Below are positions 49,229 through 63,998 of a DNA stretch of 64,000 nt, piece after piece. The stretch spans positions 186,001-250,000 of the IMG/VR virus record IMGVR_UViG_3300032287_004484; one strand, given 5' to 3'. Positions within the stretch are counted from its first letter, which is position 1. Each line of letters starts with the position of its first letter. Below the pieces are notes generated by a model. The model had not been told where the DNA came from, did no database searches, and saw nothing but the letters and a program-made list of their open reading frames with translations. Made by a program: the position numbers and the translations under genes.

Positions 49229-49432
49229 ATGAATAATTATACTTATAAAATTGAATATAATCGTTATAATTTAGGTGATTTTTTAGTAGAATTTATAGAT
49301 GGTAAAAAAAATAATGTTTGGATATTAGAAGATTTATTTAATTCAAGTGAAGTACTTGGTACAAAGCGTTATGATGCAACTTTAAGAGCAAAGGAATATA
49401 TAAGAAAAAATCATCCTGAATTATTACTATGA
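49229..49432 (+). CDS. small protein with C-terminal tag (NHPELLL)
   Basis: 67-aa ORF. Confidence 0.65.
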   Translation: MNNYTYKIEYNRYNLGDFLVEFIDGKKNNVWILEDLFNSSEVLGTKRYDATLRAKEYIRKNHPELLL

Positions 49433-49634
49433 AATATATATATAAAATTGAAAGTGATGCTATTATTGAAATTGGGGAGATACAAATTCGTTGGCTTTTT
49501 AAAGAATTACAAAACAAATCATCATTAATAAAATTTAGAAAATTTTATTCTATTACAACAATAGAATCTTTTAATAGAACACAGGATTTTTTTTAAATCA
49601 TGTTATTAAAAATAATCCAGAATTAATCATATAA
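49429..49634 (+). pseudogene. frameshifted small gene (T8 tract), paralogue of 49229
   Basis: ATGA-coupled; stops at 49596 in frame 0, while the -1 frame continues to NNPELII-stop at 49634. Confidence 0.6.
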
Positions 49635-49678
49635 TATTTTTTATATACTGATTACTTTTTAGGTTTAATCGTTAGTTT
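49634..49678 (+). repeat. 45-bp promoter-containing direct repeat, copy 1
   Basis: atattttttatatactgattactttttaggtttaatcgttagttt; -35 TAATCG, -10 TATTAT at 49689-49694. Confidence 0.9.
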
Positions 49679-49727
49679 GTATTTATTATATTATTAACTA
49701 AAATAGTAACAAATAAAGGAGACAACT

Positions 49728-50366
49728 ATGAATAAATTACAAATACTTACAATTAAAGATTTAAATAAACAAGATCTAAAGAATAAAGATTTTGATCTTT
49801 TAGATATTAAAAAATCCATTAATTATGCAGCAGCTAGAAAAATAAGAATTAAAGAATTAGAACAAGAGGTTATTAAAGATGCAGACTTAGCGTTAAAATA
49901 TGCTAGTTCAGTTATACGTGGAGAATGGTTAGAGGGCGAAGATATTATTAGTTCAAACATTAATGCTTCAACACGTTACGCTAAACTTGTAATAAGTAAA
50001 AGATTTACAAAAGCTGAACCTTTAATTTTACAAGAATGTTATCCTACGTTATATTATGTAAGAACGATAATAAAACAAAGATTTCCAGAAGGTGAACAAA
50101 TAATAGCATCTAAACCAGATAGTGCTTATATATATGCTAAAGAATATATTTTTAGCAGATGGCCAGAAGCAGAAAAAACTATTAGTACAAATGCAGAGTA
50201 TTCCTTTCTTTATGCTGAGTTTATTAATGATAAATTTCCAATGGCTCATAAGACAATTTTTACATCTTCTAATTCTGAATGGAGAAATAAATATCTTAAT
50301 CTTCTTGAAAAGCTACGAATTAATACTCAAGAAATTAAAGATGAATATATTGAATTTTTATTATGA
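49728..50366 (+). CDS. alpha-helical repeat protein with C-terminal tag (YIEFLL)
   Basis: About 5 repeats of the type A..YA..VI.GRW.E.E..I. Confidence 0.75.
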   Translation: MNKLQILTIKDLNKQDLKNKDFDLLDIKKSINYAAARKIRIKELEQEVIKDADLALKYASSVIRGEWLEGEDIISSNINASTRYAKLVISKRFTKAEPLILQECYPTLYYVRTIIKQRFPEGEQIIASKPDSAYIYAKEYIFSRWPEAEKTISTNAEYSFLYAEFINDKFPMAHKTIFTSSNSEWRNKYLNLLEKLRINTQEIKDEYIEFLL

Positions 50367-50422
50367 ATTAAAAGAATTATTAGTAGGGATAATTATTCAA
50401 TTATCCCTAAATTTTTAATATG

Positions 50423-50467
50423 ATATTTTTTATATACTGATTACTTTTTAGGTTTAGTCGTTAGTTT
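50423..50467 (+). repeat. 45-bp promoter-containing direct repeat, copy 2
   Basis: One mismatch to copy 1; -35 TAGTCG, -10 TACAAT at 50478-50483. Confidence 0.9.
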
Positions 50468-50506
50468 CTAATTATTATACAATTTAACTATAAGGAGAAA
50501 AAGTAT

Positions 50507-50737
50507 ATGATAAAACCAAAAGAAATTAGAAAAGAAGAAATAGACCTCAAGGGTTCTCAAGGTAATGCTTTTTATATTATTGGAGCAGGAAAGAATCTTC
50601 ATAGAGATCTTACAAGAGGAGGAATAGAGTTGCCTCCTTGGGAAGAAATAAGAAAAGACATGACGAGTTCAGATTATAATCACTTAACACGAGTTTTTGA
50701 TAAGTATTTTGGCGATTATGTTGATTTAGTTTATTAA
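50507..50737 (+). CDS. conserved phage hypothetical protein
   Basis: IDLKGSQGNAFYIIG...MTSSDYNHL..VFDKYFG. Confidence 0.75.
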   Translation: MIKPKEIRKEEIDLKGSQGNAFYIIGAGKNLHRDLTRGGIELPPWEEIRKDMTSSDYNHLTRVFDKYFGDYVDLVY

Positions 50738-50747
50738 AAAATATAAA

Positions 50748-50791
50748 GTTTTAATGTTTGAGTAATTGAATTTTTACTTAAACATTAAAAC
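50748..50791. repeat. 18-bp inverted repeat (terminator and/or operator over a -35)
   Basis: gttttaatgtttgagtaa-8 nt-ttacttaaacattaaaac, one G-T mismatch. Confidence 0.75.
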
Positions 50792-50812
50792 AACTTGGTA
50801 TATAATAATAAT

Positions 50813-51796
50813 ATGGGTGGAAAAGCTATTATTCCTATAATAGGGAAAGAAGCAAAAAGGTTTGATATAAATATTAGAAATAATATAATATCAAACCTTT
50901 CAATTATTGACGATTTAGTTCCTGTAAGAGAAATTAAAGAGAAAAAAGATTTTGGAGACATAGATTTTTTATGTTATTCTGAATTAAAAAGAGAAGAAAA
51001 AAATAATCAAATAATCGTTGAAATTGAAAAAAATAATTATTCATTTCAAGGTAAAATTACTAACGATAATGTTTTTTCTTTAGCTTTTAGTGACTATCAA
51101 ATAGATATTATTTTTATTTCAAAACAACATCTTAATACGAGTTATTATTATTTTGCTGATAACGATAGAGGAAACCTAATAGGATCTATTTACCATGCTC
51201 TTAATTTTAATTATGGACATCAGGGTTTATATCTAAAATTAGATAATACTAAAATCCTTTTATCGAATGATACTGAATCTATTCTTAATTTCTTAGGTTG
51301 TGGTAATGTTTTTATTAAAAAGATTTTAAGTGACGGTTTTGATACTTTTGAAGAGATGTATAAACATATAACTGAAATACCCTATTTTAGTTCTCAATAT
51401 TTTCAATTTGAAAACCTTAATAATAAGAATAGGTCACGTAATTCTAAAAGAAATACTTATAATAATTTTTTACATTATTTAAAAGATAAAACTTTTAGTG
51501 ATCCTACTCCTAATATTGAATACATGAAATATAAATCTTTATCATACTTTAATAAAGAAAAAGAGTATGTTTCTTTGTTAAAAGAACAAGAGAAAAATAA
51601 GATTATACGAAAAATGATTTCTGGTGATTTATTTTTTAATATCACTGGATTAAAAGAAAAAAAATTAGGTGAATTTATTATTTTCTTTAAAGAGAGAAAT
51701 AAATCAATAATTGAAAATATAGAAACTTATAATATAGAATATTTTGAGGAAAAAATAAAAAATGAATACGATATTTTTATCAATAATCAAAGGTAA
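50813..51796 (+). CDS. putative Pol beta-superfamily nucleotidyltransferase
   Basis: KKDFGDIDFL motif, later QIDII; start reset to MGGKAII. Confidence 0.55.
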   Translation: MGGKAIIPIIGKEAKRFDINIRNNIISNLSIIDDLVPVREIKEKKDFGDIDFLCYSELKREEKNNQIIVEIEKNNYSFQGKITNDNVFSLAFSDYQIDIIFISKQHLNTSYYYFADNDRGNLIGSIYHALNFNYGHQGLYLKLDNTKILLSNDTESILNFLGCGNVFIKKILSDGFDTFEEMYKHITEIPYFSSQYFQFENLNNKNRSRNSKRNTYNNFLHYLKDKTFSDPTPNIEYMKYKSLSYFNKEKEYVSLLKEQEKNKIIRKMISGDLFFNITGLKEKKLGEFIIFFKERNKSIIENIETYNIEYFEEKIKNEYDIFINNQR

Positions 51797-51800
51797 ATTA

Positions 51801-51905
51801 ATGCTAAGCGATTTGTTTTCTTTTGTAACCTTTGCTTTAACAGCAACTTTACTTTTAACTTTTTTTTATTATGCTTTTATAAATAAAAACATTGAAGACG
51901 AATAG
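51801..51905 (+). CDS. 34-aa single-TM peptide (absent from ORF track)
   Basis: MLSDLFSFVTFALTATLLLTFFYYAFINKNIEDE; fills the intergenic gap exactly. Confidence 0.45.
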   Translation: MLSDLFSFVTFALTATLLLTFFYYAFINKNIEDE

Positions 51906-52259
51906 ATGAACTTATATGTTCAAAAACCATGTGAAGCAATTCAATTAAATAAAGAAACCGTTCAAAAAATCATAGAAATATTTCCAGAAGAAAAATTTGT
52001 GTTTTTTGGTATTGAAATAATTAATGGGATTCAACAAAAAGTGTTTGATGATAATTTATCTAAGTTTAATCACGTAGGTGGATTTTTTTATCATAAAAAA
52101 GAAGTTAAGGTAATTTTTGAAAGTGAATGGATAATTAAAAGAAAAGATATATTTGAAATAGTCAATGATAATTATTTTAAAAGTAATTTTGTTCAAATAC
52201 CATTTATTGATTTACCAGATAAGCTAAAGGAGGAAGTTAATAATGTCACTATTAGATAA
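51906..52259 (+). CDS. hypothetical protein
   Basis: KPCEAIQL N-terminus common in phage ORFs. Confidence 0.6.
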   Translation: MNLYVQKPCEAIQLNKETVQKIIEIFPEEKFVFFGIEIINGIQQKVFDDNLSKFNHVGGFFYHKKEVKVIFESEWIIKRKDIFEIVNDNYFKSNFVQIPFIDLPDKLKEEVNNVTIR

Positions 52260-52956
52260 AGAATACGAAGATAATATTAATGATTTTAATAACAATGGTC
52301 TTTTTTTAAACGATGATTATTTAGATAAGTCGTTTAATTTCAAATCTGTTTTAGATGAGTTTTTACTTCTCAATAAAATAACTGATTCGTTTTTTAATGA
52401 AGTATATAAAAATGGTTTTTCTGACATTTTATATTTTGAAACAGAAAATAATTTTAATTATTCTATTGATGAAATAAACGATTTAGAAGAAAATTTAAAA
52501 GATATCGCAGAATTTAATTTTAATAAATATAATAAAATTTTAGATTACATGATTTTAAAAAGCACAGATGTAGAATCTGAATTTTATGGTTCTATAATAC
52601 ATTTTACTTTTAATATTTTTGATCAAATAAAAAGAAGTTTATTATTATTTAAAAAAGTAAAAGAAAAATGGAAAAATGAATATAAGGCAACTTATAAAAC
52701 TTTTAAAGATTTTAAAAATAGCAATGAATTTGAAAATATATTAATAAACATAGCAACAGAAGAACAGTTAAAAACAAAAGAAGAAGATTTTCATAGTTTT
52801 TTAATATTTACATCAATTAATAGTGATTTCTTATTGAAAGAATTATATAATCGTGATGCAAATAAATTTTTATTTGACGATAACAAAGTTTTTTTTAAGA
52901 ATAATGGTATTTCTTTATTGAAAGATATATCTAGTAGAATTATATCTTATAATTAA
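52243..52956 (+). CDS. hypothetical protein
   Basis: 237-aa ORF, GAGG SD. Confidence 0.6.
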   Translation: MSLLDKEYEDNINDFNNNGLFLNDDYLDKSFNFKSVLDEFLLLNKITDSFFNEVYKNGFSDILYFETENNFNYSIDEINDLEENLKDIAEFNFNKYNKILDYMILKSTDVESEFYGSIIHFTFNIFDQIKRSLLLFKKVKEKWKNEYKATYKTFKDFKNSNEFENILINIATEEQLKTKEEDFHSFLIFTSINSDFLLKELYNRDANKFLFDDNKVFFKNNGISLLKDISSRIISYN

Positions 52957-52959
52957 ATT

Positions 52960-53292: not shown

Positions 53293-53300
53293 AAAAATAT

Positions 53301-53792: not shown

Positions 53793-53832
53793 TATTTCTT
53801 AAATATATTTTATATAAATTAAGGAATATAAG

Positions 53833-54171
53833 ATGACTAGAGATCACTCGTTTCAATCACAAATTGATTTAATTTTTGATTCTATGGATTGGAACAATAT
53901 AGAAAAAATCTTTCATGTTTGTGATTATAAATATATGAAAAATTTACATGAAGAATATAATCCTGAAATAGAAGATTTAAAAGAAATGAGTTATCATCTT
54001 TTAAAGGATTGCTATAATCTAGGTAAAAAGAAAAATATTAATATGATTATAGCAAGTGGAAGATTTGAAGCATCTTGGAATAATACAGATGAAACGTTGT
54101 GTTTGAAATTTATACCCGAAGAAAAAGAAATAATGTTAGATGAAAAAAATGAATCTATATATGTAACTTAA
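53833..54171 (+). CDS. hypothetical protein
   Basis: 112-aa ORF with AAGGA SD. Confidence 0.65.
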   Translation: MTRDHSFQSQIDLIFDSMDWNNIEKIFHVCDYKYMKNLHEEYNPEIEDLKEMSYHLLKDCYNLGKKKNINMIIASGRFEASWNNTDETLCLKFIPEEKEIMLDEKNESIYVT

Positions 54172-54482
54172 ATTAAAGATTCTGATTTTATATTAATTGT
54201 AGGATATTTTAATTTAGAATTTATTTTAGATTCTAAAACAGATTTTTCTAAACACGTTCTTAAAGATAAAAGATATGTTATTTTATGGACTTCTAATTCA
54301 ACGTATTCATCGTCGTGATTATAAAGATATTCTTCTATATCCATTTCAAGTTTTTCACAATAATTGATAGCATTTTTATGAATAAAATTAACTAACTGAT
54401 CTTTATTAAGATCAGTTTTAATTTTATAAAAAATAACATCGTTTGAATTATCAAGTGAATCTATATAGTAGAAGTTTTTCAT
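54168..54482 (-). CDS. hypothetical protein, tandem paralogue of 54479-54805
   Basis: FYY.D....FYKI.TDL...YL.SL.T.L.K....SKL. Confidence 0.65.
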   Translation of the reverse strand: MKNFYYIDSLDNSNDVIFYKIKTDLNKDQLVNFIHKNAINYCEKLEMDIEEYLYNHDDEYVELEVHKITYLLSLRTCLEKSVLESKINSKLKYPTINIKSESLI

Positions 54483-54805
54483 TCTAAATCCTCTTTGTTT
54501 ATTTCCATATTTATAAAATCAAGTTTAGAAGTTAAACGTTCTTCAGATCTAAATTTACTTAGAAAAGTTTGAAGTGAAAAAACATAATTAAAATTTCCAG
54601 CATCAACATCAAAAGTAAAATAATCTGGATTTTCACATTGACCTTCACTGAAATAAGATTCTTTAATTCCTAATCTATTGGCTTCTATTTTTGCTTGCTT
54701 TTTTAAAAGTGATCTTAAACTTTTCAAAGATAAATCTGTTTCTATTTTATAAAAAACAGGTAACTCTCTTATTACGTCTAAATAGTAAAAAGTATTTTTT
54801 TTCAT
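54479..54805 (-). CDS. hypothetical protein, tandem paralogue of 54168-54482
   Basis: Start reset to MKKNTFY behind GAGG. Confidence 0.65.
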   Translation of the reverse strand: MKKNTFYYLDVIRELPVFYKIETDLSLKSLRSLLKKQAKIEANRLGIKESYFSEGQCENPDYFTFDVDAGNFNYVFSLQTFLSKFRSEERLTSKLDFINMEINKEDLE

Positions 54806-54822
54806 AGTTTTATCCTCTTTTT

Positions 54823-55140
54823 TTAAATCATCCATTGTAATAATTTTTTTTCATCATACTTATTATTCTTTTTTAAAAATTCTATATAATCATCTTTATA
54901 TTGAGATTTAAAAATAGTATGATGACCTTTTTCAAAAATATCTTCTAATATATTAATAGCATAAAAATAAGATACGTATGCATCTTTAGAAATAACTTCT
55001 TCTCCTTCATCCCAAGCTCCTTTAATCATATACATAGCATAATAAAAAGATTGCTCAGCATCAGTAGCAATAATTTTTTCTAGTTCTGTTATTCTTTTAT
55101 CCATAGATAAACTTTTATGTAAAGCTTCAATAGGTGTCAT
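54823..55140 (-). CDS. alpha-helical repeat protein with C-terminal tag (LLQWMI)
   Basis: SFYYAMYMIKGAWDEGEEVI, SYFYAINIL. Confidence 0.7.
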   Translation of the reverse strand: MTPIEALHKSLSMDKRITELEKIIATDAEQSFYYAMYMIKGAWDEGEEVISKDAYVSYFYAINILEDIFEKGHHTIFKSQYKDDYIEFLKKNNKYDEKKLLQWMI

Positions 55141-55421
55141 ATTAGGTGTTCTATTAATTTTAATTGATTTAAAACACTTTTTAATCTTCTAAAGACAAGA
55201 TTATTTTCTTTTATTATAAAATATTGTTCTTGATTGATTAATAATTTAAAATCCCAATTAATATCATTTAATAATTTATGATTATTAGAAATGATATTTT
55301 GTCCATTCTCAAAATAAATTTCTGTTTCAGTATTTTCCTGATTTACAAGAACATAATTTTTTATTAAGCAATCTGAATCTAAATAACTTTTTGATGTTTT
55401 TATACAAAGAAAATAATTCAT
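55137..55421 (-). CDS. small protein with C-terminal tag (LIEHLI)
   Basis: ATGA-coupled. Confidence 0.65.
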   Translation of the reverse strand: MNYFLCIKTSKSYLDSDCLIKNYVLVNQENTETEIYFENGQNIISNNHKLLNDINWDFKLLINQEQYFIIKENNLVFRRLKSVLNQLKLIEHLI

Positions 55422-55741
55422 ATCACCCATTCATGTAGATTAAATTTACCTAAAAAATCAACTTTATTTTTATTTAAAACATCTTCTTTAAAATTTAGTT
55501 TTAAAAGTTCTTCAAAAAGATCTTTATTATTTATCTTTATAGAAAGATTAAATTTAATTTTCAATTCATATTTAAAATCATTTTGGTTCTTGGTTTTCTC
55601 TTGTTTAGAATCTGAAAAATAAGAATATCCATTATAAACTAGATAATTTTCTTTATCAACATAATGATATAAAACGCAGGTAATAATTTTATCGTTAAAT
55701 AAATTAAGACACAAATAAGCGTTTATTTTATTTTTATTCAT
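55418..55741 (-). CDS. small protein with C-terminal tag (LHEWVI)
   Basis: First gene after promoter 55748-55788. Confidence 0.65.
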   Translation of the reverse strand: MNKNKINAYLCLNLFNDKIITCVLYHYVDKENYLVYNGYSYFSDSKQEKTKNQNDFKYELKIKFNLSIKINNKDLFEELLKLNFKEDVLNKNKVDFLGKFNLHEWVI

Positions 55742-55747: not shown

Positions 55748-55788
55748 ATTATATATAAGAATAGTAATAGTGACTAAACCTAAAAAAA
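55748..55788 (-). promoter_or_regulatory. conserved phage promoter (divergent pair, left)
   Basis: TTTTAGGTT-TAGTCA-17 bp-TATAAT. Confidence 0.75.
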
Positions 55789-55820: not shown

Positions 55821-55858
55821 TTTTAGGTTTAAACACTAATAGAGTAAATAAGTATAGT
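55821..55858 (+). promoter_or_regulatory. conserved phage promoter (divergent pair, right)
   Basis: TTTTAGGTT-TAAACA-17 bp-TATAGT. Confidence 0.75.
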
Positions 55859-55916: not shown

Positions 55917-57074
55917 ATGAGGAATTTAGAAAAAATATTAGACCTTTGTCAAAAATCCGACAATTCAGTCTTATTAAAGGGACCTCACGGAATAGGGAAG
56001 AGTGAAAGAGTAGAAGCATTCGCAAAAGAAAAAGGTTATCATTGCGAAATTTTATTTCTTTCTCACCAAGAAACTGGAGATTTAATTGGTATTCCATATT
56101 TAGAAAATGGAAATACCGTATGGAGTACACCAATCTGGTTACAAAGAATTTATGATGCTTCTAAGAATGGAAAAACGTGTGTATTATTCTTAGATGAATT
56201 AAACAGAGCAAGATTAGATGTTAGACAATCTGCTTTACAGTTAGTATTATCTAAGCAAATTCACCAGCACGTACTTCCAAAAGATTCTTTAGTAGTAGCA
56301 GCAGTTAATCCAGAAGATGATTACCAAGTGTCTGAATTAGATCCAGCACTTTTAGATAGATTTGAAGCTATTGAATTGAAAGCAAACACTGAAGAGTGGA
56401 TTGAATGGGCTAGAAAAAAGTCAGTCAATGAAACAGTAGTTTCTTTTGTAGCAGATAATCCAGATAAATTGTGGTTCAAAACTAACAATGAAAATGAAAT
56501 CAACCATCCTACTCCAAGAAGCTGGGTAAAAGTATCTAATTTTCTAAAAGTTTTAGAACTTGAAAAAGAAGCAGATGAGGAAAAATTCTTTTTACTTCAA
56601 ACTTTTGTAAATGGAAAGATTGGTAGAAGCGTTGGTAATCAATTTTCTATTTATTGGAAAGAAAAACAAGCACTTTCTATGGAAAGTATTGAAAAAGCAA
56701 TTAAGAAAATTAAGAATAGGAAGAAAGAAAACATGGACGAAGCTATGGAGATACTAAAACCAGTTCTCTCTACTATCGAAGTCATAAAACTTTCTCTTAT
56801 TGGAGAGGACTTACTTAAAAAGTATATTCCAAAAACAGCTACTATTGCAACAATAGATAAAGCATTTGAAACCGCTTTTCCAGTTATGGCTTTTTTCTAT
56901 TCTTTAGAATTAGAAGTTTCACATTCTATTCTAAAAGGTCTTAAAGAAAAAGACGATGAAAATATGAAAGAATTATACGCTGGTTTAGCTCGTTGTGATT
57001 CAGCAGCTGCTGGAAAATTTAGAGAAAAAGAAATTTTCCGAAGGATTATAGATAAATTCGACAACAAGAAATAA
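55917..57074 (+). CDS. AAA+ ATPase (MoxR/dynein-related)
   Basis: GPHGIGKS, LFLDELNR, ALLDRF, PTPRSW. Confidence 0.9.
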   Translation: MRNLEKILDLCQKSDNSVLLKGPHGIGKSERVEAFAKEKGYHCEILFLSHQETGDLIGIPYLENGNTVWSTPIWLQRIYDASKNGKTCVLFLDELNRARLDVRQSALQLVLSKQIHQHVLPKDSLVVAAVNPEDDYQVSELDPALLDRFEAIELKANTEEWIEWARKKSVNETVVSFVADNPDKLWFKTNNENEINHPTPRSWVKVSNFLKVLELEKEADEEKFFLLQTFVNGKIGRSVGNQFSIYWKEKQALSMESIEKAIKKIKNRKKENMDEAMEILKPVLSTIEVIKLSLIGEDLLKKYIPKTATIATIDKAFETAFPVMAFFYSLELEVSHSILKGLKEKDDENMKELYAGLARCDSAAAGKFREKEIFRRIIDKFDNKK

Positions 57075-57150: not shown

Positions 57151-57188
57151 TTTTAGGTTTAATCACTTGTAATTATTATTAGTATAAT
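57151..57188 (+). promoter_or_regulatory. conserved phage promoter
   Basis: TTTTAGGTT-TAATCA-17 bp-TATAAT. Confidence 0.75.
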
Positions 57189-57244: not shown

Positions 57245-58504
57245 ATGGATAAAATCAACAAAGAAGTCTATGAAGAAACAATGGCTAATACTCTTTGGGG
57301 ACAAGAAAATCAATATGTATTTTATGGTCACATAATTGCAGCCACAAAAGTACATTTTGATAATACACTACCTGCACCTGCTGGGGTATATTTCGCAAAA
57401 AGTCAATTTAATTTAGTGATTAATTTAGAAAAGTTTTCTGAATACTCTCTAAAAGAAAGAAGATCAATATTAGTTCACGAAGCTTTACATATAATTCTTA
57501 ATCATATAGGTAGAGCAAAGAATAAAAGAAGATTTTGCTGGAATATATCAACAGATACTGCTTTAAATCAATTTATCAAGGATTTACCGCCAGACTGTAT
57601 GTTACCAGAAAAATTTGGATTAGAACCAAAATTATCTGCGGAGAATTATTATTCTTTTCTTAGAAAGAAAATTGACGATAAAGAAATTTCTTTCAAAGTA
57701 ATTTATGAAGACGGTTCTTCTGACGATAACAACAATGGAAATCCGCAGCAAGGCAATGGAAAGAAAATATCGAAAGTTATTATGAGGGTTAAATCTAAAA
57801 GTGGTGTCAAAGAATATGAAATTGACCCTCACGTAGCAGACGATCGTAACGAAGGTGAAGTAAATGAAGAATTAGTAAATCTTATGAGGGAGAAATTAAT
57901 TCAACATGCTGAGAATAAAAGTAGGGGATTGATACCATCTGATATTGCAGATGAAATTGAAAAACTTCGTTCTAAGAAAATTGATTGGAAAAAGCATATT
58001 CGTAATCAAGCTTCTAATTCTTCCATAGATGTAGAAGAGTCTATAAAAAGAAGAAATCGTAGATTTATGAATCGAGTAGAAATTAAAGGATTTATAAAAA
58101 CTTATTCTTCTAAAGGAGTAGTAATATTAGATACTTCTGGATCAGTTAGTAATGAATTTATTTCTAAAACTTTAGGAGAAATTGATAACTTATGTAAATC
58201 AACTAATTCTGAAGTCGAACTAATTCAGGTAGATGCTCAAGTACATAGTATTAAAAAATATACTCCTTCTAATAAGAAAGTAGGTATTGTTGGTAGAGGT
58301 GGTACTTATCTTTATCCAGCAATTGAACATATTAAAAATAAAAAAATTCGTTGTGACTATATAATAGTATTAACGGATGGAGAAATTGAAAATTCTTGGA
58401 AAGAAGTACCTCAACAAAATATATTCTTTCTTTTACCCAAAGATGGAAAATTAGCGTTAGATATTTCTAATTTCAAAAAAGCAAAAGTTTTTAATATAGA
58501 TTAA
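57245..58504 (+). CDS. putative metallopeptidase plus vWA domain protein (DUF2201-like)
   Basis: HEALH (HExxH), MIDAS DTSGS, GRGGT, LTDG; adjacent to its AAA+ partner. Confidence 0.88.
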   Translation: MDKINKEVYEETMANTLWGQENQYVFYGHIIAATKVHFDNTLPAPAGVYFAKSQFNLVINLEKFSEYSLKERRSILVHEALHIILNHIGRAKNKRRFCWNISTDTALNQFIKDLPPDCMLPEKFGLEPKLSAENYYSFLRKKIDDKEISFKVIYEDGSSDDNNNGNPQQGNGKKISKVIMRVKSKSGVKEYEIDPHVADDRNEGEVNEELVNLMREKLIQHAENKSRGLIPSDIADEIEKLRSKKIDWKKHIRNQASNSSIDVEESIKRRNRRFMNRVEIKGFIKTYSSKGVVILDTSGSVSNEFISKTLGEIDNLCKSTNSEVELIQVDAQVHSIKKYTPSNKKVGIVGRGGTYLYPAIEHIKNKKIRCDYIIVLTDGEIENSWKEVPQQNIFFLLPKDGKLALDISNFKKAKVFNID

Positions 58505-58514
58505 AAAAATAATT

Positions 58515-58591: not shown

Positions 58592-58882
58592 ATGAATCAA
58601 AAAGAATATACATTATCAATTAAAATAAATGATAATCAAAAAATAATAGGATTATCTGTATTTGACGCTAAAAACAATTTAAAATATACAGGTGAAAAAA
58701 TAATTAAAGATTATAGTTCAGACTTATCGTTTTATTTAGCAAATTTTCAAAGTGACCCACATCTAATTAATATAGATGAAAAAACTTTTAATCAATTTTT
58801 AAAAGCTGATTTTAGAGATATTAAAGATATGTTTTTAATTGATTTTTATAAAAAATATAATTTTGAAGAATTTATTTTATAA
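58592..58882 (+). CDS. small protein with C-terminal tag (FEEFIL)
   Basis: AAGGA SD. Confidence 0.65.
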   Translation: MNQKEYTLSIKINDNQKIIGLSVFDAKNNLKYTGEKIIKDYSSDLSFYLANFQSDPHLINIDEKTFNQFLKADFRDIKDMFLIDFYKKYNFEEFIL

Positions 58883-59155
58883 ACACCACTCCTCTAATCC
58901 ATTATAAATTAAAAACGTTTTTAAATCTATTTTTCTATAATCTTTTCTTTTTAAATTTAGAACTTTAAAAAATAAAACTTTATTTATTGGAACAAAAAAA
59001 TCTAAATTTAATTTAAAAAAAAGTAAATTTCCTTTCATTGAAAATTCGTTTGGATTATCTAAAAAAAAAATATCTCCTTTGTTTTTATCGTACACTCTAA
59101 TGGATGATATTTTTTCATTTTTTAAAGTAAAACCAAGGTAATAATTTTCTTTCAT
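58877..59155 (-). CDS. small protein with C-terminal tag (LEEWCL)
   Basis: Start reset to MKENYY; track start 59197 lies inside a promoter. Confidence 0.6.
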   Translation of the reverse strand: MKENYYLGFTLKNEKISSIRVYDKNKGDIFFLDNPNEFSMKGNLLFFKLNLDFFVPINKVLFFKVLNLKRKDYRKIDLKTFLIYNGLEEWCL

Positions 59156-59180
59156 GTGTTTTAATATATTAAGTGTTTTA

Positions 59181-59219
59181 TTTTTAGGTTTAAACACTTA
59201 TTATATATTATAGTATATT
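59181..59219 (+). promoter_or_regulatory. conserved phage promoter
   Basis: TTTTTAGGTT-TAAACA-17 bp-TATATT. Confidence 0.75.
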
Positions 59220-59255
59220 ATATTATTACAAATAATAAAATAAGGAGAAAGTAAT

Positions 59256-59990: not shown

Positions 59991-60020
59991 AAAAATAAAA
60001 CCTAAAAGGGAAAGAAAACT

Positions 60021-60545
60021 ATGAAAACAGAACCATGGATTCAAAAACAATACTTCTCACAAGAAGAAGCATTTAAAATTGGGGAATCTGAATTTTTTAA
60101 TTTTTTTGAAAGCAAAAAATTAAAATTTGGAGTAGCATTAACATCTGGAGTTGTTGGTACAATTAGTAATTATCACGCAGTTAGACACCAAATATCTGAA
60201 TCAAGGTTCGATATGATAGGCTCTCATTATGCTGATATATACGCTATTGGATTAACTGCTTTTTTAGATATGATGATTATAGTTTTTTATCTTATGAGGG
60301 ATAAAAAATTAATTAACATATCTACTTTTTCAACATTCACTATTTCTGTATATGCTAACTTGATGTTATCTCTTCACAGTGCTGGTGGATCAACTTTTAA
60401 AAATTTACTTCTTAGTTTTTTAGATCCTGGACAATTTTTTCATTTATTCGTATCTTTAACTATGGCGACACTTCCAATCTTTGTATTAAAACACTGTATG
60501 GGATTATTAGTTCAACAATTAGAAAGTGAAAAAACTAACGCTTAA
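60021..60545 (+). CDS. multi-pass membrane protein
   Basis: About 4 hydrophobic segments. Confidence 0.7.
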   Translation: MKTEPWIQKQYFSQEEAFKIGESEFFNFFESKKLKFGVALTSGVVGTISNYHAVRHQISESRFDMIGSHYADIYAIGLTAFLDMMIIVFYLMRDKKLINISTFSTFTISVYANLMLSLHSAGGSTFKNLLLSFLDPGQFFHLFVSLTMATLPIFVLKHCMGLLVQQLESEKTNA

Positions 60546-60557
60546 GCGTTAGTTTTT
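60530..60557 (+). terminator. intrinsic terminator
   Basis: aaaactaacgc-ttaa-gcgttagtttt. Confidence 0.8.
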
Positions 60558-60573
60558 TGTTTAGATGTTAATA

Positions 60574-60611
60574 TTTTAGGATTAATCATTGTATTAAAAT
60601 GTAAGTATAAT
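60574..60611 (+). promoter_or_regulatory. conserved phage promoter
   Basis: TTTTAGGAT-TAATCA-17 bp-TATAAT. Confidence 0.72.
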
Positions 60612-60630
60612 TATCTAGTAGGTAATAAAA

Positions 60631-60966
60631 TTGAAAGAAAATTCTATTGTTAGACAATTAGTAAAAGTTTTAGAAGAAAAAACTCTAAAAAGAAAACAAA
60701 TGATTGAAGAAATTTGGAGAATCTCTGGAAGAAAAGATCCAATTAATTATTCATCTTGGTCAACAAACATTACTAAATTATATCAACTTGGTATTTTAAG
60801 AAAGCATAAGAAAATAGGATATTGGTGTGTACCTGGAACTTCTAAATTAAAATATTTTTATACTGGACCTTTTAATTATATAAAAGAAGGTATTATAAAT
60901 GAAGATGATCTTACACACCTTATGGTTAAAAAATTTGTAGAACAAAATGCTGATCAATTTATTTAA
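60631..60966 (+). CDS. hypothetical protein, possible winged-helix DNA-binding protein
   Basis: Basic; ITKLYQLGILRK..GYW pattern. Confidence 0.55.
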   Translation: MKENSIVRQLVKVLEEKTLKRKQMIEEIWRISGRKDPINYSSWSTNITKLYQLGILRKHKKIGYWCVPGTSKLKYFYTGPFNYIKEGIINEDDLTHLMVKKFVEQNADQFI

Positions 60967-61004
60967 AAATAAACATTCATTTTATTAATAAATAAAATGA
61001 GTTA

Positions 61005-61301
61005 ATGAATGATTATATTAGTGTCTCAAAATTTAACGATTCTGTTATTATTTACATTTATAGAAAAAATTATGTTTATTCAAATCTTATTATTACTTTT
61101 ATGAATCCAACTAAATATTTAACTCTTAGAAGGAAATTAAAAAATAATTGGTTTGTATATTACACGACTATGCCTTTTACAAAAAATAAAAATCAACTTA
61201 TAAATAAAGATAAACTTAGGTATTTATTATCTATTTCTTTTAATAAAGAAAACAATAGTAATTTTCATGTAGAACATGGCTTTGAGGAGTATTTTATATA
61301 A
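61005..61301 (+). CDS. small protein with C-terminal tag (FEEYFI)
   Basis: 98-aa ORF. Confidence 0.6.
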   Translation: MNDYISVSKFNDSVIIYIYRKNYVYSNLIITFMNPTKYLTLRRKLKNNWFVYYTTMPFTKNKNQLINKDKLRYLLSISFNKENNSNFHVEHGFEEYFI

Positions 61302-61398
61302 TGATATTTTCAAAATTTGAGATCAATTAATTGAAAAATATTTTAAATATTTAAAAACATTAAAAATAAGTGATCAAAATTTAATCAGTTTTCAAGTT

Positions 61399-61427
61399 TA
61401 AACATTCAAATATATTTACTATATAAT
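61399..61427 (+). promoter_or_regulatory. promoter (variant upstream box TTTTCAAGTT)
   Basis: TAAACA-17 bp-TATAAT. Confidence 0.65.
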
Positions 61428-61540
61428 AATAATAGGGAATATTTTTATTATAAACACATAATAGAGGAAAATATTTTTGAATAGCGATATAATAACACTT
61501 AAAGATATTTATGAAATTACTAAAAACACTGGAAAACTGA

Positions 61541-62047
61541 ATGGCTTTTATGAACATGATTTATCAAACTTCTTATGCTGAAGCAAAAAAAATTCTTAAA
61601 GATTGTAAAAAGAGTAAAAAAAGGGATCTTGAGAACGAAAAAAGATTATTAAGATATAAAGAGTATGCAATTTATTATGCTAGTAATATTATTAAAGGTA
61701 GATGGGAAGATTTAGAAAAAAATTTTTTAAGATCAAATGGAAGAGTTAATTCTAAAGAAATCGTTCTTTATTGTCGTAGAGTAATAAAAAAAAGATGGAT
61801 AAAAAGTGAAAAAAAGATTTTATTATATTCTGATGCTTCTTATTATTATTCTCTTTATATAATAAAAGGTAGATGGGAAAAAGGAGAAAAAAAAATATCT
61901 AATAGTCCATATTATTCTTTTTTATATGCTAAGCATGTTTTAAAAGATTATTTTGAATTAGGAAATGAAATTATTTTAGATTCTGACTATGCTAACGATT
62001 ATAGACAATTTTTAATTGATATAAATAAGGTAGAATATTTATTGTGA
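61541..62047 (+). CDS. alpha-helical repeat protein with C-terminal tag (KVEYLL)
   Basis: YYASNIIKGRWEDLE, YCRRVIKKRWIKSE, YYSLYIIKGRWEKGE, LYAKHVL. Confidence 0.72.
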   Translation: MAFMNMIYQTSYAEAKKILKDCKKSKKRDLENEKRLLRYKEYAIYYASNIIKGRWEDLEKNFLRSNGRVNSKEIVLYCRRVIKKRWIKSEKKILLYSDASYYYSLYIIKGRWEKGEKKISNSPYYSFLYAKHVLKDYFELGNEIILDSDYANDYRQFLIDINKVEYLL

Positions 62048-62322
62048 ATTGTTATTTAGTGTATAGTTTATATATAAATAAAATTGATGTATTTTACTTA
62101 TATTTTAAAAAAGAAGAAAAAATAAAAATGTTTTCTTTTGCTGGGACTATATGTAACATTGATCCATTATCAACAGAAGGTTTTAACGAAGTGTTTCCAA
62201 CTAATAGCTGGAAAAGAATACCATTTAATGAGGATAATATATATGAGATAAAAAATGAAATAACAGCGTTATCTGAAAAACAATTTTTAGAAAAATTAAA
62301 ACTACAAGAGTGGCAAATTTAA
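62044..62322 (+). CDS. small protein with C-terminal tag (LQEWQI)
   Basis: GTGA-coupled. Confidence 0.62.
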   Translation: MNCYLVYSLYINKIDVFYLYFKKEEKIKMFSFAGTICNIDPLSTEGFNEVFPTNSWKRIPFNEDNIYEIKNEITALSEKQFLEKLKLQEWQI

Positions 62323-62600
62323 TGAAAAATAAAAAAAGATTATATATAGAAGATTCAAAGATAACAAATAAAATACTTAATATTTTAGTTATAGATACCG
62401 ATAAAGATATAGTTATACATCAAAAAAAAGAATTTAAAATAAAAAAAATAGAAACATATTATAAAAATATTATTAAAGATTCAATACCAATATCAGATAA
62501 ATATTATGAACTGTTTAGTAAAATAAATTTAATTCATTTTTGTTGTTTAAATAGACAAGAATTTTTACAAGCATGTTTATTGGAGGAATGGACATTATGA
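62322..62600 (+). CDS. small protein with C-terminal tag (LEEWTL)
   Basis: TAATG-coupled start MKNKK. Confidence 0.62.
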   Translation: MKNKKRLYIEDSKITNKILNILVIDTDKDIVIHQKKEFKIKKIETYYKNIIKDSIPISDKYYELFSKINLIHFCCLNRQEFLQACLLEEWTL

Positions 62601-62770
62601 ATAATACTTTTTATCAAGGATTAAAAGGTAAAAATATATATCAAATAATAGATCAATATCTTGATAATCGTAATGAATTTAAAATTCTTTATAAGCAAAA
62701 AGATAAAGATAAATTTTTTGTTAAAAATGAAAAAGATTTTTTCAAAATCTTTAAAAAGACTTTTTTATGA
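62597..62770 (+). CDS. hypothetical protein
   Basis: ATGA-coupled, GGAGG SD. Confidence 0.55.
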   Translation: MNNTFYQGLKGKNIYQIIDQYLDNRNEFKILYKQKDKDKFFVKNEKDFFKIFKKTFL

Positions 62771-62946
62771 AAATAAAAATTCTTTTTTGTTATATAACGA
62801 TAGGAACTATTTTAGGTTTAATTTTTTATTTCTTAGACGATTCTTATATTGAAGAACAAGATAAAATAAAGATGTTTGCTTTGTTTTCTCTTTTTTATCC
62901 AATAATGATAATTATAAGAATATTGTTATTTTTTAAGAAAAGATAA
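62767..62946 (+). CDS. small two-TM membrane protein (59 aa, absent from ORF track)
   Basis: MKIKILFCYITIGTILGLIFYFL...FSLFYPIMIIIRILLFFKKR; ATGA-coupled. Confidence 0.6.
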   Translation: MKIKILFCYITIGTILGLIFYFLDDSYIEEQDKIKMFALFSLFYPIMIIIRILLFFKKR

Positions 62947-63077
62947 AAAGTAATTAGTTTTTAATTTATCATCTATATAATACTCATTTCTTTTATTAGA
63001 AGAAACATCCTCACAATGATGCTTCTTTCCATCTTTAATAACTTGCTTACATGTTCCACAAATTAAAACTTCTTTCT

Positions 63078-63362
63078 TCATTTTATCCATCCTTTATACC
63101 ATTGTAAAATTACTATTTTTGCTTCACTTGATTTACGATTCATTTTTTTATATCTAGGTGCTAGAACTGGACAATCTATTTTTTCTAAAGCTTTTTGAAG
63201 ATCTTGAAATTCTTCAATATCAAACTGTTCAAAAATATTATTATCTCCAAAATTACACTTTTTATTAAAAATACTAAAAGCTTCAAACTTTGAAAACTCG
63301 CCGCCAATTATTGCTCCAGAATAATCTTCAGAACCTTTTTTACTTATTTTATATATACTCAC
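63078..63362 (-). CDS. hypothetical protein
   Basis: GTG start with AGGAG SD after promoter. Confidence 0.6.
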   Translation of the reverse strand: MSIYKISKKGSEDYSGAIIGGEFSKFEAFSIFNKKCNFGDNNIFEQFDIEEFQDLQKALEKIDCPVLAPRYKKMNRKSSEAKIVILQWYKGWIK

Positions 63363-63384
63363 GCTATTTCTCCTTCTAGTATAT

Positions 63385-63422
63385 AGAATACTAGAATTTT
63401 GAGTAGATGCATAAACCTAAAA
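63385..63422 (-). promoter_or_regulatory. conserved phage promoter
   Basis: TTTTAGGTT-TATGCA-17 bp-TATTCT on minus strand. Confidence 0.7.
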
Positions 63423-63432
63423 GTATATCATA

Positions 63433-63768
63433 TTAAATTAGATATTCCTCTAATTTAAGAGTTGTAAAAAGATCCTCTAAACTTTGACTAAAAATTTGAT
63501 TAGGATGAAGTCCTAATATATAATTTAATTGTTGAGGTGTCAAAACAAATACTTCATCCTCAGGATAACTAACTAAATACTCTTCATATAATTCATCGTT
63601 TAAAATAAAATCAACATAGTTATCACCTATTAAATCATTTTTTTTATCAAACTCATTAACGATTGATGGATCATATATTTTTTTATTTTCTAAATCAAAT
63701 AAAACGCATTCAATTATTTGATGATTAATTTGATGGCAATTAAGATAAATATAATAACTGTTTTTCAT
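63433..63768 (-). CDS. small protein with C-terminal tag (LEEYLI)
   Basis: ATGA-coupled. Confidence 0.65.
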   Translation of the reverse strand: MKNSYYIYLNCHQINHQIIECVLFDLENKKIYDPSIVNEFDKKNDLIGDNYVDFILNDELYEEYLVSYPEDEVFVLTPQQLNYILGLHPNQIFSQSLEDLFTTLKLEEYLI

Positions 63769-63998
63769 ATCACTAGCTCATATAATTTATTTTCAATAAA
63801 ATATTCATTAATATATTCTGATTTCATAGATTTTGGTCTATTCCTTTTTAAGTTAAAAAAAGTTTTTAAATTTAAAGGATACATTTTTTTTATATTAACA
63901 TCATATATATGATCATATTTAACATCCTTTAAAAGTAATCTTTCTAAATTAAAAGTTTTTTTGATATCATAACGTTTATCAAAATAACGAAATTCCAT
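63765..63998 (-). CDS. small protein with C-terminal tag (LYELVI)
   Basis: TAATG start at the window edge. Confidence 0.6.
   Translation of the reverse strand: MEFRYFDKRYDIKKTFNLERLLLKDVKYDHIYDVNIKKMYPLNLKTFFNLKRNRPKSMKSEYINEYFIENKLYELVI

What the first reader, a model, noticed from the sequence alone, without database searches (positions are those of the whole stretch)
49229..63998. A shared C-terminal tag (E-aromatic-x-I/L-stop) on 13 small accessory proteins of different architectures
SEEN: the last six residues are HPELLL (49229), YIEFLL (49728), LLQWMI (54823-), LIEHLI (55137-), LHEWVI (55418-), FEEFIL (58592), LEEWCL (58877-), FEEYFI (61005), KVEYLL (61541), LQEWQI (62044), LEEWTL (62322), LEEYLI (63433-) and LYELVI (63765-). 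Position -4 is E in 12/13 (Q once), -3 is W/Y/F/H in 11/13, and -1 is I/L in 13/13. Many also have an F/L-x-x-x helix just upstream (DFLGKFN, QFLEKLK, EFLQACL, TFLIYNG). Codons vary (GAA/GAG, TTA/TTG/CTA, ATA/ATT), so the conservation is at protein level. The tag sits on at least three body types: ~65-aa proteins, ~100-aa beta-rich proteins and helical-repeat proteins. It occurs on both strands, and I saw it on no gene in 1-48 kb. KNOWN: T4 gp43, gp55 and gp33 dock on the gp45 sliding clamp through a C-terminal (S/T)LDFL(F/Y/L) peptide; gp33 ends TLDFLL, strikingly like YIEFLL and KVEYLL. Free-carboxylate motifs are also read by PDZ/tail-specific proteases and AAA+ machines. INFERENCE: this is a modular address label routing many early proteins to one hub (clamp, protease or degron, the AAA+/vWA pair in the middle of the cluster, or a host target). 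I know of no description of such a tag family.
Basis: partly seen in the sequence, partly recalled or inferred. Interest (0 to 1): 0.88.

Follow-up and report, generated by a model that had tools for sequence, protein, structure and literature searches.

The report
Shared C-terminal tag on phage proteins
A large T4-related phage from a metagenome ends more than twenty of its small accessory proteins, built on at least three unrelated folds, with the same six-residue tail, which most resembles the peptide that T4 proteins use to dock on the sliding clamp; the partner here is unknown.

Summary
All 13 C-termini read as reported, and no ORF in 1-48 kb carries the motif. Over about 210 kb of the same 290-kb phage contig, 15 of 267 ORFs end E-[WYFH]-x-[IL] where 0.3 are expected (22 against 0.9 with the looser pattern).

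The 13 are not independent. Nine belong to one paralogous ~100-aa family (A), three to a helical-repeat family (B), and one is a singleton.

The tag is still more than shared ancestry:
- E(-4) is the only invariant column in family A, across 30 sequences from three phages.
- In family B the tag sits on a variable-length extension that distant homologues lack.
- The A and B bodies are unrelated.
- A coiled-coil protein and two further singletons keep the tail in their orthologues.
- Synonymous codon changes, and tagged genes with no gene downstream, rule out a DNA-level or Shine-Dalgarno artefact.

Best reading: a docking peptide for one shared partner. The closest known analogue is the T4 sliding-clamp-binding motif. 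T4 gp33 ends TLDFLL, with the same acid, aromatic and aliphatic positions.

The partner is unproven. I did not find the phage's polymerase, clamp or gp55 in the 210 kb read. AlphaFold2 places the tail as an ordered terminal helix, so a structural role remains possible.

The parts
49229..49432 (+). 67-aa singleton protein ending HPELLL (loose form of the tag)
   Evidence: Orthologues at 91-99% identity end PELLI and PEFLL, so changes stay inside the motif. No match to the family A or B body HMMs.
49728..50366 (+). Family B helical-repeat protein (212 aa) ending YIEFLL. The next gene is 140 nt downstream.
   Evidence: Body-only HMM E = 1e-48. Preceded by a TTTTAGGTTTA promoter-like element at 49657.
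54823..55140 (-). Family B protein (105 aa) ending LLQWMI, with a 16-residue extension after the last repeat
   Evidence: AF2 model is all-alpha, pLDDT 96, with the tail as helix 97-104.
55137..55430 (-). Family A protein (97 aa) ending LIEHLI
   Evidence: Body-only HMM E = 9e-8.
55418..55741 (-). Family A protein (107 aa) ending LHEWVI. First gene of a minus-strand operon.
   Evidence: AF2 model pLDDT 82: five strands plus three short helices, tail pLDDT about 92. Promoter-like element at 55775-55785.
58592..58882 (+). Family A protein (96 aa) ending FEEFIL, convergent with 58877-59197
   Evidence: The orthologue in L004 ends IEELAL.
58877..59197 (-). Family A protein (about 93-106 aa) ending LEEWCL. 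Its stop shares the palindromic TTATAA with the convergent gene.
   Evidence: The L004 orthologue ends LEEWTL with GAA GAA where this gene has GAG GAG.
61005..61301 (+). Family A protein (98 aa) ending FEEYFI. Operon-terminal, and absent from the syntenic L004 fragment.
61541..62047 (+). Family B protein (168 aa) ending KVEYLL
   Evidence: Orthologues at 63-94% identity end VEYLL, VEYLI, IEYLL or IEILI.
62044..62322 (+). Family A protein (92 aa) ending LQEWQI
62310..62600 (+). Family A protein (probable start 62322) ending LEEWTL
   Evidence: (P0025 starts at the later Met).
63433..63768 (-). Family A protein (111 aa) ending LEEYLI. The next gene is 70 nt downstream.
63765..64000 (-). 3' part of a family A gene (130 aa in full) ending LYELVI. 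Its start lies beyond the window end.
55917..57074 (+). MoxR-type AAA+ ATPase (AAA_5) in the middle of the cluster. A candidate partner, untested.
   Evidence: Pfam on record. Promoter-like element at 55821. The L007 relative has a different AAA_5 ATPase next to its tagged genes, 27% identity over 106 residues.
57245..58504 (+). DUF2201_N putative metallopeptidase (HExxH) plus DUF2201 VWA-like domain. A candidate partner, untested.
   Evidence: Pfam E = 9e-13 and 1e-14, both above cut-off. Promoter-like element at 57151.
49657..49667 (+). One of nine exact copies of the promoter-like element TTTTAGGTTTA. Eight of the nine lie in 49-64 kb, most in intergenic DNA and facing the genes downstream. 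The other copies start at 50446, 55775(-), 55821, 57151, 59182, 62810, 63412(-) and 12077.
   Evidence: 23 matches at up to 1 mismatch against 10.6 expected. (50-85 nt repeat families D1, D2, D4, D5).

Best explanation
The tail hydrophobic(-6)-x-E(-4)-[W/Y/F/H](-3)-x-[I/L](-1)-COOH is a short docking motif specific to this phage lineage. It is fused, sometimes through a linker of variable length, to a fast-diverging set of small accessory proteins. These are family A (14 copies found in this phage), family B (5 copies, 4 of them tagged), a coiled-coil protein and a few singletons.

Shown:
- The tail is under purifying selection at the protein level.
- It sits on unrelated bodies.
- It is conserved across three related phages.
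- Several of the operons that hold tagged genes start behind one promoter-like element, which also precedes the AAA+ and VWA genes.

Inferred:
- The variable bodies supply different activities or targets, and the constant tail plugs them into one common partner through a hydrophobic pocket plus a contact with the invariant Glu.
- The leading specific candidate is the phage's own T4-type sliding clamp. On that reading the tag is a diverged sliding-clamp-binding motif. T4 gp33, gp43 and gp55 carry (S/T)LDFL(F/Y/L) at or near the C-terminus, joined to the body by a variable linker and interchangeable between the three proteins.

My probabilities: about 0.6 that it docks on a shared partner of any kind, and about 0.25-0.3 that the partner is the clamp.
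For: Enrichment: 15 strict and 22 loose tags among 267 ORFs over about 210 kb, against 0.31 and 0.91 expected. The distant relative L007 has 12 strict and 15 loose among 40 ORFs.

Selection on the tail:
- E(-4) is the only invariant column in 30 family A sequences whose mean column identity is 21%.
- An exhaustive profile search found only 17 representatives of family A in 1.84 billion proteins. Fifteen end in the tag and two in a shifted variant.
- 26 of 27 proteins that match the body-only family A HMM are tagged.

Modularity:
- Distant family B homologues end right after the last repeat. Tagged members add 10-19 further residues ending E-aromatic-L-[IL].
- hhalign of A against B aligns only the tail.
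- The coiled-coil protein keeps the tail in L007, SEHLL against GEYLI.
- Orthologues of the AELLI protein at 64-96% identity keep AELLI while the residues just upstream vary.

Not a DNA artefact: five of the 13 have no coupled gene downstream, orthologues swap GAG for GAA, and no DNA repeat lies at the 3' ends.

Resemblance to the T4 motif: T4 gp33 ends TLDFLL, gp43 ends SLDFLFG and gp55 ends SLDFLYEAND, read from NC_000866. The literature describes the motif as hydrophobic and acidic, joined by a divergent linker of variable length, and interchangeable (PMC2988020, PMC7892883).

The phage is T4-related: Gp23 capsid protein, S77 prohead protease, Portal_T4, T4_baseplate, gp46/47, and a RecA-like protein that I read as UvsX.
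Against: - No partner was identified. I found no gp45, gp43, gp55 or gp33 homologue in the ~210 kb read, so the phage's own clamp-binding motif is unknown.
- More than twenty small accessory clients would be unprecedented for a clamp.
- Family A has L-E-E at -6 to -4, where T4 has (S/T)-L-D.
- AF2 places the tail as an ordered short helix with pLDDT about 92 (A) and 80-90 (B), which fits packing onto the protein's own body.
- Outside families A and B the statistical support is modest: 5 loose matches against 0.84 expected (P = 0.002), and only one strict match.
Confidence: 0.5

Rival explanations
1. The tail is a structural element. It would be a short amphipathic C-terminal helix that packs on, or caps, the protein's own hydrophobic surface, or swaps between subunits to form oligomers. 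Its recurrence on other bodies would come from recombination among neighbouring genes or from convergence.
For: AF2 gives the tail high confidence as a helix in both families. Positions -6, -3, -2 and -1 are hydrophobic, and D-F-L at -13 to -11 is conserved with the tail in family A. Outside families A and B only one strict match exists.
Against: In family A the single invariant residue is a charged Glu, with no conserved partner residue. Family B folds are complete without the tail in distant homologues, and the linker length varies from 10 to 19 residues. The same pattern recurs on a coiled-coil protein and on a helical 122-aa protein.
Confidence: 0.2
2. The tag is a capsid-targeting and processing signal, analogous to the capsid targeting sequence (CTS) of the T4 internal proteins. 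Diverse anti-defence proteins would be loaded into the prohead and injected. The L-x-E inside the tag would be a site for the T4-type prohead protease.
For: T4 internal proteins are diverse bodies that share only a 10-residue CTS, and gp21 cleaves after L/I-x-E (PMC3012670, PMC9026906). The phage encodes an S77 prohead protease at window 573-1226. L or F occupies -6 and E occupies -4 in most family A tags. The T4 CTS contains Q-E-F-I, close to E-E-F-I (string confirmed present in PMC8442874). A Tad3 anti-Thoeris homologue lies next to the cluster.
Against: The T4 CTS is N-terminal. Cleavage after E(-4) would remove only three residues, yet those three are the conserved ones. Several tagged operons start behind the same promoter-like element that precedes the AAA+ and VWA genes, and that element precedes only one gene in the 1-48 kb structural part. 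No head-module ORF carries the tag.
Confidence: 0.1
3. The tag addresses proteins to an AAA+ or protease machine. It could be a ligand for the MoxR ATPase and metallopeptidase-VWA pair in the cluster, with the invariant Glu binding the VWA metal site. Or it could be a tether or degron for a Clp machine built around the phage's ClpP-like protease, in the way SspB uses its C-terminal ClpX-binding peptide.
For: The AAA_5 ATPase and the DUF2201 metallopeptidase/VWA protein sit in the middle of the cluster and carry the same promoter-like element. A ClpP-like gene with its Ser, His and Asp motifs intact lies in the same genome arm (L010:19521-20105). VWA metal sites bind a ligand carboxylate, and AAA+ machines commonly read C-terminal tails (established knowledge).
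Against: In L007 the neighbouring AAA_5 ATPase is not orthologous, and no VWA gene is on record nearby. The tag does not resemble known ClpX C-motifs (my own knowledge). There is no co-variation or other direct link.
Confidence: 0.15
4. The tag mimics a host C-terminal peptide and aims the proteins at a host hub, for example an SSB-tail or clamp-binding pocket, or a PDZ-type reader of hydrophobic-x-hydrophobic-COOH.
For: The tail fits the class II PDZ ligand form, and like SSB tips it is acidic followed by hydrophobic (my own knowledge). The family is restricted to one phage lineage, as expected for a host-specific interaction.
Against: The host is unknown. No host protein could be examined. 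Bacterial PDZ proteins are mostly periplasmic, and I saw no obvious signal peptide on the tagged proteins, though I ran no predictor.
Confidence: 0.05

Closest known systems
T4 sliding-clamp-binding motif, (S/T)LDFL(F/Y/L), on gp43, gp55 and gp33
   Same: It is a short acidic-plus-hydrophobic peptide at or near the C-terminus of unrelated proteins of a T4-type phage, joined to the body by a divergent linker of variable length. T4 gp33 ends D-F-L-L, which gives acid at -4, aromatic at -3, Leu at -2 and an aliphatic residue at -1, exactly as in IEFLL, VEYLL and PEFLL here (PMC2988020).
   Different: T4 has three clients, all in replication or transcription. Here there are at least 22, all small accessory proteins of unknown function. 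Family A has L-E-E where T4 has S/T-L-D. Here the motif is always at the extreme C-terminus, whereas gp55 carries five more residues after it. Binding to a clamp is untested, and the clamp gene was not found.
T4 internal-protein capsid targeting sequence (CTS)
   Same: Diverse, fast-evolving accessory or anti-defence proteins share only a roughly 10-residue address peptide. The peptide contains an L/I-x-E protease site. The phage has the same protease family, S77.
   Different: The CTS is N-terminal and is removed after targeting. The tag is C-terminal, and several of its operons carry a promoter-like element that is nearly absent from the structural part of the window.
Encapsulin cargo-loading peptides and the SspB C-terminal ClpX-binding peptide
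   Same: These are C-terminal peptides that tether otherwise unrelated proteins to one assembly, an HK97-fold shell in one case and an AAA+ unfoldase in the other.
   Different: There is no sequence resemblance, and neither is known as a multigene phage family. This is a comparison from my own knowledge only.
Poxvirus ankyrin/PRANC (F-box-like) multigene families
   Same: A variable target-binding body is combined with a conserved C-terminal box that plugs into one host machine.
   Different: This is a eukaryotic virus system, the box is a folded domain of about 30 residues, and there is no homology.

Membership tests
T4-type sliding-clamp-binding motif | Short hydrophobic and acidic peptide at or near the C-terminus, joined to the body by a variable linker | tested here: met
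   Tails are listed. Family B linkers run 10-19 residues.
T4-type sliding-clamp-binding motif | Consensus (S/T)-L-D-F-L-(F/Y/L) | tested here: inconclusive
   Positions -4 to -1 match gp33 (D-F-L-L against E-F/Y/W-L-L/I). Position -5 is I/V/L in family B-type tags but E in most family A tags. S/T at -6 is absent.
T4-type sliding-clamp-binding motif | The same motif on the phage's own DNA polymerase, gp55 and gp33 | tested here: inconclusive
   phmmer with T4 gp43, gp44, gp45, gp55, gp33 and gp62 found no homologue in about 210 of 290 kb. The remaining ~80 kb was not read.
T4-type sliding-clamp-binding motif | Binds the hydrophobic patch of the gp45 trimer | not testable with these tools
   No clamp sequence is in hand, and no complex prediction is available.
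T4 capsid targeting sequence | N-terminal propeptide of about 10 residues | tested here: not met
   The conserved element is C-terminal. The N-termini of families A and B are not shared.
T4 capsid targeting sequence | L/I-x-E cleavage site, and an S77 prohead protease in the phage | tested here: met
   At -6, 22 of 29 family A tails have L, 4 have F and 1 has I. E is at -4 in 27 of 29. Peptidase_S77 lies at window 573-1226. This is a sequence match only; cleavage is untested.
T4 capsid targeting sequence | Cargo found in virions | not testable with these tools
   The phage is known only from metagenomes.
Class II PDZ ligand (hydrophobic-x-hydrophobic-COOH) | Hydrophobic residues at P0 and P-2 with a free carboxylate, and a PDZ reader present | tested here: inconclusive
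   The sequence form is met. No PDZ domain appeared in the Pfam annotations of the loci read. The host is unknown.
ClpX C-terminal degron (ssrA LAA type or MuA type) | Terminal L-A-A, or a basic RRKKAI-like tail | tested here: not met
   The tails are E-aromatic-x-I/L. The motif definitions come from my own knowledge.

The most novel reading that the evidence does not exclude
A lineage of large T4-related phages has turned a hub-binding C-terminal peptide, most plausibly its clamp-binding motif, into a general address label. It attaches that label to more than twenty diversifying accessory proteins of several folds, making a tagged arsenal delivered to one phage or host machine. No such multigene tag family has been described for phages.
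Probability: 0.3. Interest if true: 0.85.

Novelty: new variant of a known kind. Interest (0 to 1): 0.62.

Why it matters
If the tail is a docking label, one short peptide gives a handle on about 10% of this phage's unknown genes. A single pull-down would name the hub, and with it the place where a whole hypervariable gene set acts.

If the hub is the clamp, the list of T4-type clamp clients would grow from three core proteins to a large accessory set, and clamp-bound DNA would emerge as an arena for phage accessory functions.

If the label is instead a packaging or proteolysis signal, it would be a C-terminal counterpart of the T4 capsid targeting sequence, or a first phage adaptor family.

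Families A and B are also orphan folds with confident models, so they are tractable structural targets.

Tried and rejected
- **Shine-Dalgarno/ATGA by-product: rejected.** Five of the 13 have no coupled gene downstream. An overlap constrains only the third base of the last codon. Orthologues differ by synonymous GAG/GAA. GAG is mildly over-used at -5/-4 (8 of 30 against a 12% background), which I note but cannot explain.
- **DNA repeat at gene 3' ends: rejected.** Only promoter-like intergenic elements repeat.
- **Composition artefact of an AT-rich genome: rejected.** Shown by the motif's internal frequency, by tail shuffles, and by 0 of 50 ORFs in 1-48 kb.
- **Pfam and PHROGs on the tagged proteins.** Nothing reached a cut-off. 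The only significant hit was a function-unknown PHROG for 54823 (1.3e-7). Sub-threshold hits such as SLT_beta at E = 0.05 for the 67-aa protein are chance level, and I did not pursue them.
- **Fold searches.** Neither AF2 model matched anything in PDB or BFVD at E <= 0.001.
- **TATAAATA as a T4-type late promoter.** It occurs 23 times, fewer than my rough estimate from base composition (about 55), and is rarely upstream of a gene. The sigma-70 scan was no better than shuffles, 133 against 126.
- **Looking for gp55 next to gp46/47.** The 189-aa and 194-aa proteins there match nothing in Pfam, PHROGs or PDB.
- **Scanning metagenome contigs with the ATPase.** It returned only one distant hit.
- **Walking the contig.** Thirteen steps read about 210 kb but did not reach the replication core.
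- **Literature search for DUF2201.** It gave nothing useful.

Full report
**Source and setting**

The window is positions 186,001-250,000 of a 290,274-bp viral contig (IMGVR_UViG_3300032287_004484). A near-identical 290,572-bp ENA scaffold also exists. The DNA is about 24% G+C.

The phage is a distant relative of T4. It has:
- a gp23-type capsid protein at 5495-7249 (Pfam Gp23)
- an S77 prohead protease at 573-1226
- gp46/gp47 homologues at 39641-41536 and 43117-44130
- outside the window, Portal_T4, T4_baseplate, a RecA-like protein that I read as UvsX, an NAD-dependent ligase and a 5'-3' exonuclease

No cultured phage shares DNA similarity with the 49-64 kb region.

**Observation**

In the window, 12 of the 34 called ORFs from 49 kb onward match [EQ][WYFHL]x[IL]-stop, and none of the 50 before it does (Fisher P = 5e-6). 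The 13th ORF, 63765, dropped out of that call set because it overlaps another ORF. The motif's internal frequency in the same proteins predicts 0.2-0.3 terminal matches, and shuffled tails never gave more than 3.

I then walked along the contig and read about 210 of its 290 kb. Among 267 distinct ORFs of at least 45 aa:
- 15 end in the strict form E[WYFH]x[IL], against 0.31 expected
- 22 end in the loose form, against 0.91 expected

Nearly all tagged genes lie in one accessory arm of roughly 65 kb. Two lie in islands far from it (L141:12347-12643 and L143:10654-11286).

**The 13 are not independent**

All-against-all BLAST, alignments, and HMMs built from the bodies with the tails cut off sort the tagged proteins into a few groups.

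- Family A. About 100 aa, with a beta hairpin at the N-terminus and three short helices at the C-terminus. It has 9 of the 13 window proteins and 14 copies in the part of the phage that I read.
- Family B. Helical repeats of the form A-x-x-Y-A-x-x-V-I-K-G-R-W-x-x-G-E. It has 3 of the 13 window proteins and 5 copies in the phage.
- Singletons:
  - the 67-aa protein at 49229
  - a 113-aa coiled-coil protein (L001:18238-18579, ending SEHLL)
  - a helical 122-aa protein (L010:17382-17750, ending AELLI)
  - a 58-aa protein (ending SELII)
  - a 210-aa DUF8361 paralogue (ending YEELIL)

So the count of independent events is far below 13.

**Why the tail is still more than shared ancestry**

1. Within family A the tail is the most conserved part. 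Across 30 sequences from three phages, with mean column identity 21%, the only invariant column is E(-4). The tail logo is D-F-L at -13 to -11, L at -6, E at -5, E at -4, W/Y/F at -3, and I/L at -1.
2. Family A is tiny and lineage-restricted. A profile search of 1.84 billion representative proteins found 17 hits. Fifteen end in the tag and two in a shifted variant.
3. In family B the tail is an add-on. Distant homologues (P0008, P0012) stop two residues after the final D-Y-x-x-[FI]-[LI] of the last repeat. Tagged members carry 10-19 extra residues of variable sequence that end EYLL, EFLL, QWMI, EHLI, EWLI or EYLI.
4. The A and B bodies are unrelated. hhalign aligns only the last ~21 columns.
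5. Relatives keep the tail.
   - A syntenic fragment of a close relative (L004) has EELAL, EEWTL and VEYLI.
   - A distant relative (L007, from a 110-kb contig) has 15 tagged ORFs among 40. These include a family B member (LEYLI) and the coiled-coil orthologue (GEYLI).
   - Orthologues of the 67-aa protein vary only within the motif: PELLL, PELLI, PEFLL.
   - Orthologues of the 122-aa protein at 64-96% identity keep AELLI while the preceding residues change.
6. Outside families A and B the statistics are modest: 5 loose matches against 0.84 expected (P = 0.002), and only one strict match. The ortholog evidence above carries the case for those proteins.

**Artefacts excluded**

- Eight of the 13 overlap the start of the next gene. 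Five do not: two are convergent on a shared TTATAA, one is operon-terminal, and two have gaps of 70 and 140 nt. Those five carry the best motifs.
- Codons vary at every position. The orthologue of 58877 uses GAA GAA where the window has GAG GAG.
- No DNA repeat lies at the gene 3' ends.

**Structure**

The AF2 model of a family A member (pLDDT 82, pTM 0.75) has five strands followed by three short helices. The last eight residues form a short helical turn with pLDDT about 92.

The model of family B member 54823 (pLDDT 96) is an all-alpha repeat. After a loop, the tail forms a final helix (residues 97-104) with pLDDT 80-90.

Neither model matches anything in PDB or BFVD.

So the tail is predicted to be an ordered amphipathic helix. 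That fits a peptide that docks into a groove, but it fits packing against the protein's own body equally well. I could not inspect contacts.

**Context**

The cluster is accessory DNA. Its contents:
- small genes on both strands
- two tRNA genes
- a Tad3 (anti-Thoeris) homologue at 48114-48635, E = 3e-36
- an M23 peptidase
- a MoxR-type AAA_5 ATPase at 55917-57074, followed by a DUF2201 metallopeptidase/VWA protein at 57245-58504
- in the same arm but outside the window: RNA ligases, a polynucleotide kinase/phosphatase (PNKP), and a ClpP-like protease with intact catalytic motifs

A promoter-like element, TTTTAGGTTTA followed by a -10-like TATAAT, has nine exact copies in the window. Eight lie in 49-64 kb. 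Most are intergenic and point at the operons that hold tagged genes, and also at the ATPase and VWA genes.

The structural part of the window has only one exact copy of this element. TATAAATA, the T4 late promoter, is not enriched. I infer that the tagged genes belong to an early or middle class, not a late one, but no expression data exist.

**Comparison with known systems**

I read the T4 clamp-binding tails from the T4 genome record instead of relying on memory. T4 gp33 ends TLDFLL, gp43 ends SLDFLFG, and gp55 ends SLDFLYEAND.

[quoted passage not shown] It is attached to the body through a divergent linker of varying length, and it is freely interchangeable among the three proteins (PMC2988020, PMC7892883).

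The tag here shares:
- the position at the C-terminus
- the acid at -4
- the aromatic residue at -3
- the Leu/aliphatic pair at -2 and -1
- in family B-type tags, the aliphatic residue at -5
- the variable linker

It differs in two ways. Family A has L-E-E in place of S/T-L-D. And it decorates more than twenty small accessory proteins, not three core proteins.

The decisive comparison would be with the tails of this phage's own polymerase, gp55 and gp33. I could not make it. phmmer with the T4 proteins found only gp46 and gp47 in everything I read. About 80 kb remain unread.

[quoted passage not shown] There, diverse anti-defence bodies share only a 10-residue address peptide, which the S77 protease removes after L/I-x-E (PMC3012670, PMC9026906). 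The tag contains L-x-E, and the phage has the protease. But the tag is C-terminal, the three residues after the would-be cut are the conserved ones, and the promoter class argues against late expression.

**Verdict**

Its independence was overstated, but the modular, selected nature of the tail holds.

I put about 0.6 on a docking peptide for one shared partner. Within that, the T4-type clamp is the leading candidate (0.25-0.3). It is followed by an AAA+ or protease machine (the MoxR/VWA pair or Clp), then capsid targeting, then a host hub. I put about 0.2 on a purely structural or oligomerisation role.

I found no description of such a tag family among phage accessory proteins. Since shared terminal address peptides are a known device in T4, I class it as a new variant of a known kind.

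Noticed in passing
window 49657, 50446, 55775(-), 55821, 57151, 59182, 62810, 63412(-), 12077: Nine exact copies of TTTTAGGTTTA, embedded in 50-85-nt repeated intergenic elements and followed by a TATAAT-like -10. Eight lie in the accessory region, most facing operons. The element resembles a T4 MotA-box middle promoter (TGCTTTA at -30) in form. It looks like the phage's early or middle promoter class.
   Followed up: partly
window 48114-48635 (+): A strong match to Pfam Tad3, the Type I Thoeris inhibitor (E = 2.8e-36), lies directly upstream of the tagged cluster and is flanked by tRNA-Leu(TAA) at 48017-48098 and tRNA-Asn(GTT) at 49091-49164.
   Followed up: no
window 55917-57074 and 57245-58504; also window 10860-12068: A MoxR-type AAA_5 ATPase is followed by a protein with a DUF2201_N metallopeptidase domain (HExxH) and a VWA-like domain. 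A second AAA_5/AAA_3 ATPase sits inside the structural block. The role of these pairs in a phage is unknown.
   Followed up: partly
L010:19521-20105 (+), outside the window (about 25 kb past its right end): A ClpP-like protease (Pfam CLP_protease) with Ser, His and Asp motifs intact, in addition to the T4-type S77 prohead protease at window 573-1226. It is therefore probably not the head-maturation protease.
   Followed up: no
window 58877-58882: The convergent family A genes 58592-58882 (+) and 58877-59197 (-) end on the same palindromic hexamer TTATAA. Each reads Leu-stop from the same six bases.
   Followed up: yes
window 7347-8555 and 9561-10460 (+): A GIY-YIG/NUMOD3 homing-endonuclease-like gene lies directly after the major capsid gene. 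A di-haem cytochrome c peroxidase-like gene (CCP_MauG) sits in the structural block, which is an unusual auxiliary gene for a phage.
   Followed up: no
L003:1894-3057 and L003:3045-4238 (+), outside the window: Two adjacent paralogous proteins of about 390 aa have C-terminal halves made of Trp-rich repeats (G-T-W-x-x-G-x-W). Long antisense ORFs arise from the repeat.
   Followed up: no
window 54168-54482 and 54479-54835 (-): Two untagged paralogous genes complete the minus-strand operon behind three tagged genes. One ends ESLI, a near-miss to the tag, and the other ends EDLE.
   Followed up: no
family B homologues P0008-P0012: The roughly 36-residue helical repeat A-x-x-Y-A-x-x-V-I-K-G-R-W-x-x-G-E occurs in untagged proteins from other metagenomic contigs. 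It has no Pfam model, and its confident model has no PDB fold match.
   Followed up: partly
L145:16578-18428 (-), outside the window: The phage's NAD-dependent DNA ligase ends Y-S-D-F-T-F, which has an acid at -4 and an aromatic residue at -3 like the tag and the T4 clamp motif. The tail lies at the end of the BRCT domain, so it may be coincidence.
   Followed up: no
window tags, codons -5 and -4: GAG is used for 8 of 30 Glu codons at -5/-4, against 12% genome-wide. This makes GGAG-like strings just before the stop even where no gene follows. Unexplained, and possibly chance.
   Followed up: partly
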